In this document: one piece after another, positions 2,198-14,400 of the stretch
Layout: each line of letters opens with the position of its first letter
How positions within the stretch are numbered: the first letter of the stretch is position 1
From: Podarcis erhardii
Lineage: Eukaryota
DNA length: 64,000 nt
Strand: one strand, 5' to 3'
Assembly: GCA_964252035.1 (NCBI GenBank)
Contig: OZ176204.1
Translations under genes and position numbers: made by a program
The notes under the pieces: generated by a model
Told to the model about the DNA's origin: nothing
Seen by the model: the letters and a program-made list of their open reading frames with translations, nothing else
Database searches by the model: none

Positions 2198-2347
2198 CTG
2201 CCCGTTGCTTCCTGCATCAGGGTCCCTGGCTAAAACCAGAGCAATTCGACGTCCAACAGAACTGTCCTCTGCTACGCTCACAGATGAGTCAGAAGTAATG
2301 TCAAACTGTGGGCTGTTGTCATTCTCATCCAGTATGGTGATAGTAAC
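2198..2347 (-). CDS. CDH23: CDH23 exon ~35 (150 nt): VTITILDENDNSPQFDITSDSSVSVAEDSSVGRRIALVLARDPDAGSNGQ
   Basis: ttctccattggacag|GTTACT...GGGCAG|gtagca; contains DENDN and DPD motifs. Confidence 0.96.
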
Positions 2348-3556
2348 CTGTCCAATGGAGAATGCAGATATGAATAAGAGCTCTGTCTCTTACAGACACC
2401 AGTACTAGAGCTGGGGAGAAACAGTGATTTAGCCAAAAATTCATTAGATTCACCCTATAATTTGAGGAGAAATGATTTTGTGAAATTGTTCCATGCAATT
2501 TTATTTCTCCAAATTGTTTAACTGATTATTGAAGCATTGCCTATTCCTTGGAAGCATACTCAACACTTAAAGAATACAAACTGCTAGAGGAATGATCCAT
2601 CCATTCTAGAAAAGTATCATCCTTTCTGTATCATCCATTTTTTTAATGGTGGCAGCCATTTTAAAAACATCTTAGAACAGGCTTTCTGGAAAAAGGCAAA
2701 ATGATGACCACTCTTCCCGCCCCAGAAATTCACCCTACTCCCAAAGTATTGGTGAAGCAAAACAGCCCATTCTGAGGTTGATGAAATGGCTGAGCAATAG
2801 TCATTGTCCATGCAGTATAGCCCTACTTTCTGCATAATCTGAGCAAACAGAAGGACCCTTGCATTTATAGCTTGAATTGAAGCTGCTGCTGCAAAGGAAT
2901 GCTTATGTTTGAAGCAAGCCCCACTTTGGGGTTTGGATAAGTGCAGATCCCAGCCGGCTTGCTGTAAGCCTTGATCAGCTGCTCAGCACTTACGACTCCT
3001 GGCAGGCACCAGCTGCACTATGCAGTACCCAGTGGAGAACTACAAAGCACAGCCAATCGCAGCTGGCTTCCTATAAGTGCCAATCAGTAGTTTGGCACTT
3101 CCAGCAAGCTGGCTTGAGGCAAGCATCAGCTGCACTCCTGACTTTGGGAACTCAGTAGCGCAGCCAATCCCAGTCAGCTTGCTATAAAGTGTTTACAGCA
3201 AGCTCACTGTGATCAGCCTCACTACTGAAGTCCTGGTGGGGAATGCTGTTGTGCAGTGAAATCGCCACAGGCTTGCTGTCACTGCCAATCAGCTGATGAC
3301 ACTGACAGCAAGCCTCGTTTGCTAGGCAACAATCAGGAGAACTTGAAGGCTTCTGAAAGTTTCTTGGTAGCGATGTCCCCACTTGTCCCTCACCTGATAT
3401 ATAAGATATGACAGATGGGCATGGTTTGGGGAAAATTGCACCACAGGCCGAAATTGCTGGGTTTAAATGGTCCCATGGGGTGGAGTTATCTCACCCCCTG
3501 GGCTAAGGTATAATGTCTACCTTAAGAGATGAAAGCTTTAAACTGAAGAACTAGGT

Positions 3557-3692
3557 CAGTTTTCCCAAACTTGGGTCTGCAGCTGTTCATTGGACTACAA
3601 CTCCCATCATCCCTAACTAACAGTACCAGTGGTCAGGGATGATGAGAATTGTAGTCCCAAAACACATGGGGACTCAAGTTTGGGAAACACTG
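3557..3692. mobile_element. Palindromic hAT-type MITE
   Basis: Terminal inverted repeats cagttttcccaaactt / aagtttgggaaacactg; 8-bp TSD aactaggt (3549-3556, 3693-3700). Confidence 0.8.
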
Positions 3693-3713
3693 AACTAGGT
3701 GGTACCTCTAACA

Positions 3714-3849
3714 CAAGCATCCCCAAACCCGGCCCTCCAGATGTTTTGGGATTACAACTCCCATTGTCCCTAGCTAACAGGACCAGTGGTCAGGGATGAT
3801 GGGAATTGTAGTCCCAAAACATCTGGAGGGCCAAGTTTGGGGATGCCTG
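3714..3849. mobile_element. Palindromic hAT-type MITE
   Basis: TIR caagcatcccc / ggggatgcctg; 8-bp TSD ctctaaca (3706-3713, 3850-3857). Confidence 0.85.
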
Positions 3850-4504
3850 CTCTAACACTTCTGTATGGCTGGAAGAACTAATTCAAGTTTACTCAGAAGC
3901 AAATACCTCTCTATTCAACAGGACTTACTGTAAACATGGACTGGGTCGTAGGCTACATGTGCATTCAGGCACTTCTAATATAGCGAGTTCCTCTAATCTT
4001 CACAACCACATTGACAGAGGGAAGTGGAAACCTCCCATTTATTATAGAGGCTCTGCACAACACCTCACTGGTGTTGACACATGAGCCCATTTAGCAATAC
4101 ATGTAGCCAAGAAATACATGGAAATTTCAGCTCACAGTTACATTAGTCAACTCACACAGCATCAATATATTCTCAGAATCACTTTGCTGTGAGAACTGCC
4201 ATCAGTAGCTCTTTTTTTTGTAAAGGGATCAGGTTATTATGGATGTGCCTCAGCTGCAGTCATGAGTCCAAAATCACCCTGATAGTATTCAAGCTGTGTT
4301 TTCTGTCATTAGCTAAAGGAAATGCTGTCATGTCTAAAAATAACTGTGCATGCACACACACAATACACAAAAGGAGGAGAAAAAGAGGAAGATGCTTTTA
4401 TTTATGAGTCTTTATTTACCTGGTTAAAGGCTCCAGCTGCAGGGCCAGGCAGCATGGCCTGCTTCTAGAGGGAGGCTGAAGCCCCCTTTCTGCTTCTTTT
4501 AGGG

Positions 4505-4640
4505 CAGGCTTCCTCAACCTCGGCCCTCCAGATGTTTTGAGACTACAATTCCCATCATCCTTGACCACTGGTCCTGCTAGCTAGGGGTCATGGGAGTTGT
4601 AGGCCAAAAACATTTGGAGGGTCGAGGTTGAGGAAGCCTA
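4505..4640. mobile_element. Palindromic hAT-type MITE
   Basis: TIR caggcttcctcaacctc / gaggttgaggaagccta; 8-bp TSD ttttaggg (4497-4504, 4641-4648). Confidence 0.85.
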
Positions 4641-4846
4641 TTTTAGGGTGATTTTTTATTCTTGTTGCAAAAAAAAAAAACCACAATCAAAAGGAGAGGC
4701 ATGCTTCTCCGCTTCAAGAACAAGCAGCTGCTGAAATGAGTGGCCACCTGAACAGCCAAACCTGTCTCCTCTAAGCCACCTCGATTCCTTCCATTGTTGA
4801 CTCTCTTTTGGCCCATTTTTTCCAACACGACATCACAACTTTCCCC

Positions 4847-4998
4847 NNNNNNNNNNNNNNNNNNNNNNNNNNNNNNNNNNNNNNNNNNNNNNNNNNNNNN
4901 NNNNNNNNNNNNNNNNNNNNNNNNNNNNNNNNNNNNNNNNNNNNNNNNNNNNNNNNNNNNNNNNNNNNNNNNNNNNNNNNNNNNNNNNNNNNNNNNNN
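4847..4998. other. Assembly gap (152 N)
   Basis: Run of N characters. Confidence 1.
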
Positions 4999-5621
4999 AT
5001 CGCTGTGTTGTCTCACTTAAGACTTTGGGAGCTGAGTCCTACTTCAAGTAAAACTTGGGGGACTGAGGAGGACTGCAGAGCTTCATGTCTGCACAAAGCC
5101 CAATTTACTGTTTCTAAATTCCATTATACCCAGAATAGGCTGGGATGGACATGAAATGATCTGAGAGAAAAATGTCCCTTCCCTCCACTCCCCTTTCATT
5201 CTCAATCCTAGGGGGAAAGGGTTGCTTAGAAGAGTCATAAACGAGTTTGTGAGGCATTTATGTTCTTACTGGGTGCACATTCTTAGGGGCAGCAAGTCAT
5301 TTGTTTAGTGGACTGAACAAGGCCTGCCTGGCAAGATAGAACAACCATCTTCTTTAAAAGAATTTAGAATGCTGGAACTGGAATGTGAAGGTAGCTGCAT
5401 AGCTGAGAACTAGCTGTCTCAAAAATGCTAGGGAATTCTAAAGCTTGCATGCACTTCAGAATCCAATAAATGACATTCCTCAGCTTGCCTGTTTTGCACC
5501 CTATATTTGCACCCCAATGGAAATGTATAGCAACAACTACTTGCTTGAAAGCCACAACAAAGGGTCACAGGCAACAACAAACAAAGGAAGGATAAACACA
5601 ATGGAGGGGAAGCACTCTTAC

Positions 5622-5624
5622 CTT
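5622..5624 (-). CDS. CDH23: CDH23 3-nt microexon (AAG, Lys), exon ~34
   Basis: ctaataac + ~45-nt pyrimidine tract ending ctctccaacag|AAG|gtaaga. Supplies the K missing between DSTV and VTITILDEND. Confidence 0.85.
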
Positions 5625-6380
5625 CTGTTGGAGAGAAGAACAAAATAGGATGGAAAAGAAGAAGAAAAACAGTTATTAGATTTAAATCCTTTTAAACAAT
5701 GTGGTGTGAATTCAATGCTTTGGGAAAGGTCAGCTGTAGATGCAATGTAACGAGGCACAGATGCAATGAAAGGAAAACACAGGTGAACCATGTCTAAACT
5801 CTGCTATTGTTGCTTTGCCAATATCCCTCAATCATCTAAGATATGTGGCATCCTCAACTATTTTGTTGCTAAGTCTCTCAACCAATTGAACACCAATTGT
5901 CTGTCCAGGAATATCAATATATTCCGACCTACAACCCCCTCCCCCCCCCCAAGAATTTGGCCCCTGGAAGCTCTTAATTGCCCCAGGGAGGGAAGTGGCA
6001 ATGAATGTTAACATGAAATGTGGCAAGCCCAAGATCACTGGCTGCAAGAATGTCTTTCACCGTAACTGCTTTTATAATGTTTTTAACTGCATTTGTTTTA
6101 AGAGTGTTGGATGCTTTTGCTTTGTTTGTTTGTTTTTACATTGTGACTCTGAGCTGCTTAGGGACCAAGGGTGGGATATAAACTCGGTCAATCAATCAAT
6201 CAATCAATCACGATGGGAATCGGTGCCAGGAAGGAATGCTTGCCAGGGCAAATGCCTGCGTTTCGCTAGAGGTGCTAAATTCATATCTGAAAACTGTTAA
6301 TTTTAACACCTCAGGTAACAAGGCTGTGCTCAGTGACAATACAAAACAATTCAGAAATGTTTGATTGATACACACACACA

Positions 6381-6624
6381 CAATCGTACCTCGGAAGTTG
6401 AACGCCTTGCGAGTCAAACGTTTTGGCTCCCAAACGCCACAAAGCTGGAAATGAGCGTTTGCGAATGCTCTTTGGAACCTGAACGTCTGATGCAGCTTCT
6501 GCAGCTTCTGATTGGCTGCAGGAGCTTCCTGCAGCCAATCGGAAGCTGTGCCTTGGTTTCCAAACGTTTTGGAAGTTGAACGGACTTCCGGAACGGATTC
6601 CATTTGACTTCCAAGGTACGACTG
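6381..6624. mobile_element. Tc1/mariner-type MITE (CAGTCGTACC-type TIR subfamily)
   Basis: caatcgtacctcggaagtt ... gacttccaaggtacgactg|ta, with internal inverted repeats. Confidence 0.7.
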
Positions 6625-6751
6625 TATAAGCTTTCCTGTGGAAACAATAAACTTTCCCTGGGTGGCAGCGGGGACCTAGCCTTGGAAAGAATAGCCAACT
6701 CAACACTGTCCTACTCTACAAAGCCAAAGGGTTACAGCAAAAATAGCTCAC

Positions 6752-6853
6752 CACAGTTGAGTCAAGCTTCGGACCACCGTCATCTGCAACAACAGTTAGG
6801 GTGTAAAAATCTCCTTTCTCTCGATCTACCTGTCCTTTGACTGTGATCACACC
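6752..6853 (-). CDS. CDH23: CDH23 exon ~33 (102 nt): GVITVKGQVDREKGDFYTLTVVADDGGPKLDSTV
   Basis: tttcccttggcag|GGTGTG...ACTGTG|gtgagc. Confidence 0.96.
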
Positions 6854-11407: not shown

Positions 11408-14400
11408 CTTTGAACAAGCAAACAAACAAATGAAACAAGCAATAAGGGGCTACATTAATACACTAAGCTAAATCATGGTTTGCTTTACCACAGTTTGTTT
11501 AACAAATCACGTGTCATCTCATAAACAAGAACATAAGCCATGGCTTACTTCTTCAAAGCTTGGTTTGTTTTCCAGCTCCTCTCACCTTGTGGCTTTCTGC
11601 TTGGCACGTGTCTGGGGTGAGCAAACAAACATGGCTGAGACACAATACCAGGCCATGATTGGTAAGCCGACGATTAACCATGGCTTCACACGGCAGTTTG
11701 TTGGCAGGAAACAAACCTTGGTTCATCTACTGGACTAGTTTCACATGCTCAAACAAATCATGGTTAGGCTAAACATATCACAGGTTACCATTATTTGAGA
11801 AACTAGGCCATTGTGTCAAAGTCCAACTATTCAACATACTTATTTTTAGAAAATATATAAGAGTGTTTCTACTCCCTGTCCAGTCACAGCCCACCCAATT
11901 TCAGAAGAATACTGAAATCAAGCTTCTAAAGGTAAGCACCAGAACTGTGAATTCTCCTTGGAAATACAATAGCACCTACTGCAGTTGTTTGACAAGTAGT
12001 GAAATATGCTAGTGTTGGTTGGTGCCATTTAATGATCAAGCTCTCTGTTAGATTAACTGAAGCTTCAAAAAAGTCTTCAAAAGTCATTCACCAGGGTGGA
12101 TTAAATGCCTGAGACCAGACCTGAGACGGCTCCAGATAATCAGCCTCAGTCAAAAGTGCTTGGAGTAGCACGGCAACCACTTGCAGTGGTTTTATATCTG
12201 AGTATTCAGCCCCTTGAACTTAGGTTGAGAAATACAGAACATCTGTACAGGGTAAAATCCCAGCTCAACCTTGAAGCTTGCTGGGTTTATTTTAATCTTA
12301 TTTAATAAAATGCACATACACTTGATTGTGAAAAGCTTCAACGTAGTTTACAAAACCATGAATGGTGTTTCTTAAACTATAGTCTATAGGCTAATGGGTG
12401 GGGTCCGTGGGTATTCTGCTGGTCTGGAAGACCCATTTAAAGCAAAAGGAAAGCTTTCTCCAGAACGGTGACAAACACAGGATTCAAATGAAGGGTGGTT
12501 CCAAACAGTGAACATTTTTGGGTGAGATTCAATCACATTTGCACAATTTGTTGGGAGGCCTTGAGGAATACACCCATCCCCCCGCCCCAAATACAGGACT
12601 TTTTGAGATAAGGAAAGTGACAAGAAAACACACTGGGAAATATGGGACACTTGGCTTTGATGCAGCAGCATCTAACCTCCCAGCAAACAGATCAGAATGA
12701 ATGCTTATTAAACAGCTAATGCCATCTAATTTCCCTACAAACAAATCAGGATGAATGGTCAATGAGCAGGTTAGCTGGAAGTACTCTTAAGTTTCTTCCA
12801 GCACTCCTTGCAAAGTGAGGGGGGGAAATATGCATGAGTGAAACAGGGCTGCCTGCCACAAATACTTGCACTGCTGTGCTGAGTTCTTCTATTCCTCTCT
12901 ACAATATGTAATACAATTTACCTCATGTTCTGATGTCCCCATAATATGCATTTCCTCATTCCACGTTAGAGCTAATTGTGTGGAATGGGGAAAAATGCAC
13001 GACACGGCAATGGCAGGAACAGAGTAAGCTGTGTCTATGTTACCGAAGGGGAGAACAAGAATTCAACATGGGGCGTTTTGGGCAGTTGTTCAATTTTATT
13101 TTATTTTATTATAATATGCAGCTCTGCCCTGAATATGGCAGGTGAGGGGAAAGGGATGTGTTGCTAGGTAACAAACAAGGAGGTTCCACTGAGAGTCTTC
13201 ATGGACAAATATCTGAGGGCGGTTTTGGATGCTGCTGAGGAAGTGTTAGCTAAATACAGTCACTTCTGTAATCAACTGCCAATGCTTCATGAAATGTTCA
13301 AAGGGGAACTTATTCAGGCTACAGATGTAAATCTCCCCCCATGAAAATTCCACTCTGAATATTAGCAAGTGCTGCCAGCTGAACAGAGATGAGACTGTGT
13401 ATCTTCCTAGCAATGTCTGAAGCCGCTATCAGTGGCATAGAGCACACACAAGCCCAGCAATGTTAGGCCTTTTCTTTACCCTGATCATTTAGTGATTCAG
13501 TTGCACAGGCATATATAAGGAGCCAAGTTTTAACCCAAAGGTCCTTCAAGCAAGCTAATAGGTGGTGGGTGTAATGTAAGAAAACACAGTGGTGTCCAAA
13601 GAAGAAGAAAATCACAACAGTGGGAATACATAATCCAACAAAGTTGAAGGATTACTGAGTTCTAAAGCAAGTTATTATCTGTCTTAATATTCCCTCTGAA
13701 GCTGCTGCTTTGATGGAAGTTACTACAGCCAGCAATCACTGTCAGAAATTGGCTCAGAACTTGAGATATTGCATAGTTCAAATAATTTCATGGTGTGTGC
13801 ATATAATGGAATATCACTTGATACTAAAGGAAACACAACTCAATGGTTCCCTCTGGCGTTCTTATGGCTTATTGCAAGGTTCTTCTTCCTTCAAAGCATC
13901 ATTGGTGACACTGGAGTCATGTATATGAGCCCAAAGAATAATGCACTTGATGTAGGCAGCCTCTGTTACAAGCATATCACATATATTTCTTAAAAAGCTA
14001 GGGAAAAATAAGAACACAATTTATTAACACGGCAGAGTATTTTTTAAAGGAATGCCAAGAGTGTCTTCTAAAAGGGTGAAGTACATTTGTGCCCTCTGCT
14101 GGATTTTTTTATTACTTTAGAAAGTTTGGATTTTTGGTGGGGAGACTGTGTGTATATGTGTGTGTAGGTTGAAATTCCAGCATATCAAATGAGGGAAATC
14201 TGAAATTCTAAGCCCTAACAACTGGATCAATGTAAGTGACCGCCCACCCCCAAATTTAAACAATACTGACCAGCCCTGAATGAATATCTCTATGCAGTCA
14301 CCAGCAATCCTGAACATGAGGATCACAGATATGGCCAGCAGAAATCCCAGCGATTGCAAAGGCTATAATGGTGGTACCTTGTTAAAGACTTTGTATTTGT

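What the first reader, a model, noticed from the sequence alone, without database searches (positions are those of the whole stretch)
5622..5624. A single-codon (3-nt) microexon completes CDH23 EC13
Seen: exon ~33 ends ...DSTV|gtgagc and exon ~35 starts cag|VTITILDEND. Between them, on the minus strand, is CTAATAAC, then a ~45-nt AG-free pyrimidine tract, then CAACAG|AAG|GTAAGA. Known: human CDH23 reads GPKVDSTVKVYITVLDEND, and I recall (unverified) a 3-nt exon annotated here. Inference: the lizard uses this microexon to insert the Lys. Only with it do the 18 exons total the recalled human length (834 codons). Skipping is in-frame and would shift the register of the last EC13 beta-strand just before the Ca2+-binding DENDN linker, a possible way to tune tip-link mechanics. 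Gene predictors usually miss such exons.
Basis: partly seen in the sequence, partly recalled or inferred. Interest (0 to 1): 0.8.

Follow-up and report, generated by a model that had tools for sequence, protein, structure and literature searches.

The report
Conserved 3-base Lys microexon in CDH23
The three bases AAG at 5624-5622 are very probably the reptile copy of a known, deeply conserved one-codon exon of the hearing gene cadherin-23; it restores the normal length of one cadherin repeat and is easily missed by gene predictors, so this is a sound annotation, not a new biological feature.

Summary
On the minus strand, one CDH23 exon ends ...DSTV|gtgagc at 6752. The next starts cag|VTITILDEND at 2347. 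Inside the 4404-nt intron sits ctaataac, then a pyrimidine tract, then caacag|AAG|gtaaga, with the AAG at 5624-5622.

Of 16 AG|NNN|GT sites in the intron, this one scores far best, at 22.6 bits against 11.9 for the runner-up. Shuffled introns reach that score about 2 times in 10,000.

Solved Cadherin-23 structures read DSTV-K-VYITVLDEND, which is exactly one residue more than the two flanking exons encode. Two papers state that human CDH23 has microexons of 6 and 3 bp.

I fetched the same intron from a bird (Mimus), three unnamed contigs that look sauropsid or mammalian by their sequence, a pangolin and two fishes. In every one, the best candidate is cag|AAG|gt. In the tetrapods it follows a 62-81 nt AG-free tract.

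With the Lys, the repeat has the standard cadherin spacing of 18 residues, seen in 92% of 1335 repeats. Without it the spacing is 17, seen in 0.4%.

About half of the fish gene models lack the Lys, and several models mishandle this junction.

There is no RNA evidence from the lizard, and nothing supports regulated skipping. My verdict is a real exon that is already known in kind, of low novelty.

The parts
6752..6853 (-). CDH23 exon of 34 codons (GVITVKGQVDREKGDFYTLTVVADDGGPKLDSTV). It carries the DRE and ADD calcium-binding motifs of EC13. Its donor is GTG|gtgagc.
   Evidence: Sequence. It aligns without gaps to PDB Cadherin-23 chains 7u71 and 5wj8, residues 63-96.
5625..6751 (-). Intron upstream of the microexon, 1127 nt.
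5672..5679 (-). Candidate distal branch site CTAATAAC, with the branch A about 52 nt upstream of the microexon.
   Evidence: Branch-like yUnAy motifs lie 39-75 nt upstream of the microexon in the bird, Logan and pangolin introns. The branch-site role is inferred, not shown.
5627..5688 (-). AG-free zone of 62 nt, 76% pyrimidine. It includes the roughly 45-nt pyrimidine tract at 5671-5627.
   Evidence: The same feature is 76-81 nt long in birds and mammals and 40-53 nt in fishes.
5622..5624 (-). The 3-nt microexon AAG (Lys), phase 0 on both sides, flanked by the acceptor caacAG (5626-5625) and the donor GTAAGA (5621-5616).
   Evidence: CAGAAGGT is invariant across six species in alignment A2. 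The matching Lys is present in PDB Cadherin-23.
2348..5621 (-). Intron downstream of the microexon, 3274 nt. It contains the masked or gap run of N at 4847-4998, which I left untouched.
4300..4340 (-). A second short island conserved among sauropsids in this intron (..atgaSagcatttcctY..YtaatK..). Its function is unknown and it may have nothing to do with the microexon.
2198..2347 (-). CDH23 exon of 50 codons (VTITILDENDNSPQFDITSD...DPDAGSNGQ). It encodes the end of EC13 strand G, the DENDN linker and the start of EC14.
   Evidence: Sequence. It aligns to 7u71 residues 98/99-147, which leaves chain residue 97 unencoded by either flanking exon.

Best explanation
AAG at 5624-5622 (minus strand) is the orthologue of the 3-bp microexon of vertebrate CDH23.

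It is spliced between the exon ending ...DSTV and the exon starting VTITILDEND. It adds one Lys in the middle of the last beta-strand (strand G) of cadherin repeat EC13. With it, the protein reads DSTV-K-VTITILDENDN, as in mammals and fishes.

An exon this small probably depends on unusually strong signals:
- a near-consensus donor, AAG|GTAAGA;
- a CAG acceptor;
- a long AG-free pyrimidine tract;
- a distal branch site.

The most likely status is constitutive, or nearly constitutive, inclusion. The Lys gives EC13 the canonical cadherin spacing between the D.G.P motif and the DxNDN linker.

What is shown: the sequence anatomy, its statistical distinctness, its conservation across vertebrate introns, and the presence of the Lys in CDH23 proteins.

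What is inferred: actual inclusion in this species' mRNA, the branch-site role of CTAATAAC, and constitutive rather than regulated use.
For: 1. Anatomy and chance. The site is the best of 16 AG|NNN|GT sites, at 22.6 bits against 11.9, with P about 2e-4 in simulated introns. Its donor (10.4 bits) beats all but 2 of 17 neighbouring exon donors. Its acceptor (12.2 bits) is above the neighbours' mean of 10.5.

2. The missing residue. The upstream exon ends at residue 96 of PDB chain 7u71 and the downstream exon starts at residue 98. Residue 97 is Lys.

3. Literature. Human CDH23 is described as 69 exons plus microexons of 6 and 3 bp (PMC8268283; PMC12752033). GENCODE/RefSeq numbering is two exons higher at c.5908, so both microexons lie 5' of codon 1970.

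4. Conservation. The top-scoring candidate is cag|AAG|gt in the orthologous intron of Mimus L001, Logan L002, L003, L009 and L010, Manis L007, fish L008 and trout L006. The best lizard-to-bird intron alignment is this island.

5. RNA in a fish. The Logan contig L005 is spliced, and it joins AAA directly to the VSITILDEND exon.

6. Spacing. The D.G.P to D.NDN distance is 18 in 91.7% of 1335 repeats and 17 in 0.4%. The form with Lys has 18.

7. Fish gene models. Twenty have DSTV-K-VS.. and 19 lack the Lys. All the models held only as UniRef entries (not also in NCBI) lack it. That is the pattern expected when a microexon is missed.
Against: - No transcript from this species or any other squamate was available, and the third protein search found no squamate contig.
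- No accessible paper states the position of the human 3-bp microexon. I place it here from the pangolin genome, the PDB sequences and the exon-numbering offset.
- My splice-site scores use matrices written from memory, so they are approximate.
- The 152 N at 4847-4998 in the same intron cannot be inspected.
- AlphaFold2 predicts the form without Lys to fold just as confidently, so structural need is not demonstrated by modelling.
- In trout the acceptor is weak, and several NCBI models of cyprinids, salmonids and others lack the Lys, so inclusion may not be universal.
Confidence: 0.92

Rival explanations
1. The microexon is real but regulated. Skipping, or use of another acceptor, would give a functionally distinct or unproductive CDH23 isoform, for example to tune tip-link mechanics or CDH23 dosage.
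For: - Skipping keeps the reading frame.
- The Lys sits mid-strand in the AlphaFold2 model, at K102 within strand G 98-108, so its loss would change strand pairing or length.
- A fish RNA-like contig (L005) uses an acceptor 53 nt upstream and so makes a 56-nt exon with a stop codon.
- Four of the six other tetrapod introns carry a TGC within 20 nt of the acceptor. From my own knowledge, that is the kind of motif seen at SRRM4-dependent microexons.
Against: - No transcript without the Lys was seen. Every sequence lacking it is a gene prediction.
- The spacing without the Lys is almost never found in cadherin repeats, at 0.4%.
- The splice signals are strong rather than weak. From my own knowledge, strong signals are more typical of constitutive exons.
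- The lizard has no TGC near the acceptor.
- A single assembled contig from one fish is thin evidence.
Confidence: 0.06
2. The AAG island is not used in this lizard. The protein lacks the Lys (DSTV-VTITIL), or the Lys comes from somewhere else: the AAA site at window 2829-2827, or sequence hidden in the N run.
For: - A second Lys-coding site, tgcag|AAA|gtaggg, exists at 2829.
- 152 bases of the intron are unreadable.
- Many annotated CDH23 models lack the Lys.
Against: - The 2829 site scores only 9.9 bits against 22.6, and no second Lys site appears among the three best-scoring candidates in the bird or unnamed Logan introns; the pangolin's extra AAA site scores -1.0 bits.
- The 5624 island is the segment of this intron that aligns best to the bird and Logan introns.
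- An unused exon would not be expected to keep a near-perfect donor, its acceptor and a 62-nt AG-free tract.
Confidence: 0.02

Closest known systems
The 3-bp microexon of human CDH23, described in reviews as one of two microexons of 6 and 3 bp (PMC8268283, PMC12752033)
   Same: Same gene, same size, and the same inferred place: between the exon ending DSTV and the exon starting V.I.(V/I)LDEND. It has the same product, one Lys in EC13, as read in PDB Cadherin-23 chains 7u71 and 5wj8. The pangolin genome shows the same isolated cag|AAG|gtgagt.
   Different: Only the species and the intron lengths differ: 1127 + 3274 nt here, against 307 + 3563 nt in pangolin and 139 + 106 nt in one fish. The papers I could read do not give the position of the human microexon, so the equivalence is inferred.
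The 3-bp micro-exon of Drosophila homothorax, spliced out of a longer exon (PMC7392893, title and abstract only)
   Same: It is a conserved 3-bp coding exon. In the fish contig L005, the CDH23 microexon likewise appears as the last 3 nt of a longer 56-nt exon made from an upstream acceptor.
   Different: It is a different gene and phylum. The long form in fish is out of frame and carries a stop codon. Nothing of this kind was seen for the lizard.
Neural and sensory microexons that depend on SRRM3/SRRM4 (my own knowledge of the field; the topic of PMC10987577 and PMC7652395)
   Same: Very short, in frame, in a sensory-cell gene, and with a long pyrimidine tract upstream.
   Different: The UGC motif close to the acceptor is absent in the lizard, though present in several other species. 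Neither tissue-specific inclusion nor dependence on these factors was tested. I do not file it in this class.

Membership tests
Orthologue of the vertebrate CDH23 3-nt (Lys) microexon | It lies in the intron between the EC13 exon ending ...DSTV and the exon starting V.I.(V/I)LDENDN. | tested here: met
   The flanking exons align to PDB Cadherin-23 chains and to fish CDH23.
Orthologue of the vertebrate CDH23 3-nt (Lys) microexon | It is three bases, phase 0 on both sides, encodes Lys, and has AG before it and GT after it. | tested here: met
   cag|AAG|gtaaga at 5624-5622. The Lys is present at this junction in PDB 7u71 and 5wj8 and in 20 fish CDH23 proteins.
Orthologue of the vertebrate CDH23 3-nt (Lys) microexon | The same island is conserved in the orthologous intron of other vertebrates. 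| tested here: met
   It is the top-scoring candidate in Mimus, four Logan contigs, Manis and two fishes. CAGAAGGT is invariant in alignment A2. No other squamate could be found.
Orthologue of the vertebrate CDH23 3-nt (Lys) microexon | The annotated human 3-bp microexon sits at this junction. | tested here: inconclusive
   Papers confirm that a 3-bp microexon exists and that it lies 5' of c.5908. They do not give its exact place. Human sequence was not consulted.
Orthologue of the vertebrate CDH23 3-nt (Lys) microexon | It is included in the mature mRNA of this species. | not testable with these tools
   No squamate transcript was retrievable. The only RNA-like evidence is the fish contig L005.
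SRRM3/SRRM4-dependent sensory or neural microexon | A UGC motif lies within about 20 nt upstream of the acceptor. | tested here: not met
   There is no TGC within 20 nt in the lizard. It is present in Mimus, L002, Manis, L010 and both fishes, and absent in L009.
SRRM3/SRRM4-dependent sensory or neural microexon | Inclusion is tissue-restricted and depends on the splicing factor. | not testable with these tools
   No expression data were available.

The most novel reading that the evidence does not exclude
The CDH23 microexon may be a regulated switch and not a fixed exon. Sensory cells would choose between the 3-nt exon, skipping, and a longer stop-containing exon made from an upstream acceptor (as in the fish contig L005). 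That choice would set either the dosage of CDH23 or the geometry of EC13 next to the EC13-14 calcium linker.
Probability: 0.07. Interest if true: 0.5.

Novelty: already known. Interest (0 to 1): 0.2.

Why it matters
The practical value is in annotation. A one-codon exon in a deafness and Usher-syndrome gene is easy to lose. In the public protein sets I sampled, about half of the fish CDH23 models lack the Lys, and several bird and mammal models break at this junction. A simple rule recovers the exon in every vertebrate intron tested: find the best cag|AAR|gt behind a long AG-free pyrimidine tract.

For biology, the result adds that the exon is conserved from teleosts to mammals and that its Lys restores the canonical cadherin repeat spacing. 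It does not open a new question unless regulated skipping is later shown.

Tried and rejected
- **Exhaustive protein search with the 50-codon exon.** The ranking was dominated by giant cadherins with many repeats. Only one CDH23 representative appeared (P0028, Sparus), and it lacks the Lys.
- **Fetching a whole fish CDH23 locus (Takifugu).** I switched to partial gene models and Logan contigs.
- **Third protein search with the genomic open reading frame around the DSTV exon, aimed at squamates.** It returned only bird-like, mammal-like and fish contigs, with no squamate.
- **AlphaFold2 of fish EC13-14 with and without the Lys.** Mean pLDDT was 91.0 and 91.8, the fold was the same, and strand G was one residue shorter without the Lys. 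The modelling does not discriminate.
- **Literature.** I found no accessible statement of where the human 3-bp exon lies, and the paper I looked up by DOI, expected from memory to be the original human CDH23 gene-structure report, is not held.
- **The AAA site at 2829.** Rejected because its score is low and it is not conserved.
- **Alternative donors or acceptors 3 nt away at the flanking exons.** None exists in the sequence.
- **The SRRM4-type UGC motif.** Absent in the lizard.
Not tested.

Full report
**What is in the window**

The minus strand carries part of a cadherin-23 (CDH23) gene. A tblastn map with a fish CDH23 protein (P0163) finds 17 ordinary exons between about 55,658 and 366.

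- The exon at 6853-6752 encodes GVITVKGQVDREKGDFYTLTVVADDGGPKLDSTV and is followed by gtgagc.
- The exon at 2347-2198 is preceded by ggacag and encodes VTITILDENDNSPQFDITSD...DPDAGSNGQ.
- Both boundaries fall between codons.
- The intron between them is 4404 nt and contains a run of 152 N at 4847-4998. I did not try to fill it.
- At 5624-5622 the minus strand reads caacag|AAG|gtaaga. Upstream lie a pyrimidine tract (5671-5627) and ctaataac (5679-5672).
- The nearest upstream AG is at 5690-5689, so the AG-free zone is 62 nt and 76% pyrimidine.

**Is it more than chance?**

The intron holds 16 AG|NNN|GT sites. I scored acceptor and donor with approximate vertebrate weight matrices written from memory, so the values are only rough.

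- The 5624 site gets 12.2 + 10.4 = 22.6 bits.
- The next best (GGG at 3497) gets 11.9, and the only other Lys site (AAA at 2829) gets 9.9.
- In 5000 Markov-1 simulated introns, a Lys-coding site this good appeared once.
- Against the 17 ordinary exons of the same gene, the donor is exceeded by only 2 and the acceptor is above the mean of 10.5.

**Is a residue really missing between the two exons?**

Yes. In PDB Cadherin-23 chain 7u71, the upstream exon aligns without gaps to residues 63-96. The downstream exon aligns so that its first residue falls at 98. A short peptide spanning the junction with Lys aligns without gaps to 7u71 and 5wj8, both of which read DDGGPKVDSTVKVYITVLDENDNSPRFD. So mammalian CDH23 has exactly one more residue, Lys, than the two flanking exons encode.

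**Literature**

[quoted passage not shown] A 2025 clinical paper repeats this. It adds that a variant at c.5908 is in exon 43 by the old count and exon 45 in GENCODE/RefSeq (PMC12752033). That places both microexons 5' of codon 1970. A long-read retina study calls the other one "micro exon 12" (PMC12047242). None of the papers I could read gives the position of the 3-bp exon, so its identity with this Lys is inferred from the evidence below.

**Comparative evidence from proteins**

The one CDH23 representative from the exhaustive search is a UniRef entry from Sparus aurata. It reads DSTV-VSITILDEND, without Lys.

A second search returned 39 teleost CDH23 proteins. Twenty read DSTV-K-VS.. and 19 lack the Lys. 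All 9 models held only as UniRef entries (not also in NCBI) lack it, while most NCBI models have it. This is what one expects if a separate tiny exon is sometimes missed.

Partial models show the same trouble:
- A mink model replaces the Lys with 12 residues read from the intron.
- The mockingbird, pangolin and trout models run into the intron and stop.

**Comparative evidence from genomic DNA**

I fetched the orthologous intron from eight sources:
- Mimus melanotis (L001);
- two related Logan contigs (L002, L003);
- a bird-like Logan contig (L009);
- Manis javanica (L007);
- a mammal-like Logan contig (L010), which ends before the downstream exon, so only the first 1407 nt of its intron could be scanned;
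- a fish Logan contig (L008);
- rainbow trout (L006).

In every one, the best-scoring AG|NNN|GT is a Lys codon AAG:
- Mimus: ..cctcctacag|AAG|gtaagc, 25.0 bits
- L002: ..cctcccacag|AAG|gtaagc, 24.9 bits
- L009: ..cctccaacag|AAG|gtaagc, 22.3 bits
- Manis: ..ctgctacag|AAG|gtgagt, 20.5 bits
- L010: 19.4 bits
- L008: ..attgcag|AAG|gtaaga, 16.4 bits
- Trout: ..attgcag|AAG|gtatgt, only 7.2 bits because the acceptor is weak

Shuffle probabilities were 0.0005 or less, except for trout at 0.014.

In an alignment of six species, CAGAAGGT is invariant. When the lizard intron is compared with the bird and Logan introns, the best match is this island.

All tetrapod copies have a 62-81 nt AG-free zone that is 71-79% pyrimidine, with branch-like motifs 39-75 nt upstream.

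No squamate other than the window could be retrieved.

**RNA-level evidence**

The only RNA-like sequence spanning the junction is a fish Logan contig, L005. Its upstream exons are spliced. After ...ACTGTG (DSTV, ending at 747) it carries 53 nt, then AAA (801-803), joined directly to GTG TCT ATT..., i.e. VSITILDEND.

The 53 nt correspond to the branch and pyrimidine region just upstream of the microexon in the fish genomic contig L008, where they are preceded by ..tgttgtag.

So the microexon's donor is used in that fish. This molecule, however, used an acceptor 53 nt upstream and made a 56-nt exon that brings a stop codon into frame. It may be a minor unproductive isoform, a splicing intermediate or an assembly artefact. 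The closest described case I found is the Drosophila homothorax 3-bp micro-exon, which is spliced out of a longer exon (PMC7392893).

**What the Lys does**

In 1335 cadherin repeats from 150 large cadherins, the distance from the D of D.G.P to the first D of D.NDN is 18 in 91.7% and 17 in 0.4%. EC13 of CDH23 has 18 with the Lys and 17 without it.

An AlphaFold2 model of fish EC13-14 with the Lys has a mean pLDDT of 91.0. It places the Lys at position 102, inside strand G (98-108), just before the DENDN calcium linker.

The natural fish model without the Lys folds equally well (pLDDT 91.8), with strand G one residue shorter at 98-107. Modelling therefore cannot say whether the short form would work.

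The spacing statistics and the strength of the splice signals both point to constitutive inclusion. Regulated skipping remains possible, but nothing here supports it.

**Comparison with known systems, and novelty**

This is the reptile orthologue of a microexon already annotated in human CDH23. I rate it as already known. It should not be filed as an SRRM3/4-dependent microexon: the UGC motif near the acceptor is absent in the lizard, and tissue specificity could not be tested.

**Verdict**

- Confidence that this AAG is a used, orthologous Lys microexon is about 0.92.
- Interest is low, at 0.2. The value lies mainly in annotation quality.

Noticed in passing
window 4300-4340 (minus strand); L001 about 13866-13905; L002 about 2075-2115; L009 about 4075-4115: A second short island is conserved among the lizard, the bird and the unnamed sauropsid-like Logan contigs, in the intron between the microexon and the next exon. 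It reads ..atga(c/g)agcatttcct.. followed by (c/t)taat. It lies 260-1300 nt downstream of the microexon and its function is unknown.
   Followed up: partly
L005:748-803 (fish Logan contig SRR13709156); L008:2106-2161: A spliced fish contig carries a 56-nt exon. It consists of the 53 nt of branch and pyrimidine region plus the AAA microexon, made from an upstream acceptor that is also present in fish genomic DNA. This exon puts a stop codon in frame (DSTVKT*).
   Followed up: partly
P0270 (Mustela lutreola), P0271 (Mimus melanotis), P0276 (Manis javanica), P0274 (Oncorhynchus mykiss); 19 of 39 fish CDH23 models: Public gene models mishandle this junction. The mink model inserts 12 residues read from the intron in place of the Lys. 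Three models run into the intron and end there. About half of the full-length fish models omit the Lys.
   Followed up: yes
window 4847-4998: A run of 152 N lies inside the same intron, 624 nt downstream of the microexon.
   Followed up: no
L006:18685 (rainbow trout): The trout copy of the microexon has a purine-rich stretch (ggggaaatt) just before its acceptor and scores poorly. The NCBI models of salmonids, cyprinids, a smelt (Osmerus) and Arapaima in my sample lack the Lys. The microexon may therefore be weaker in these lineages, or simply missed.
   Followed up: no
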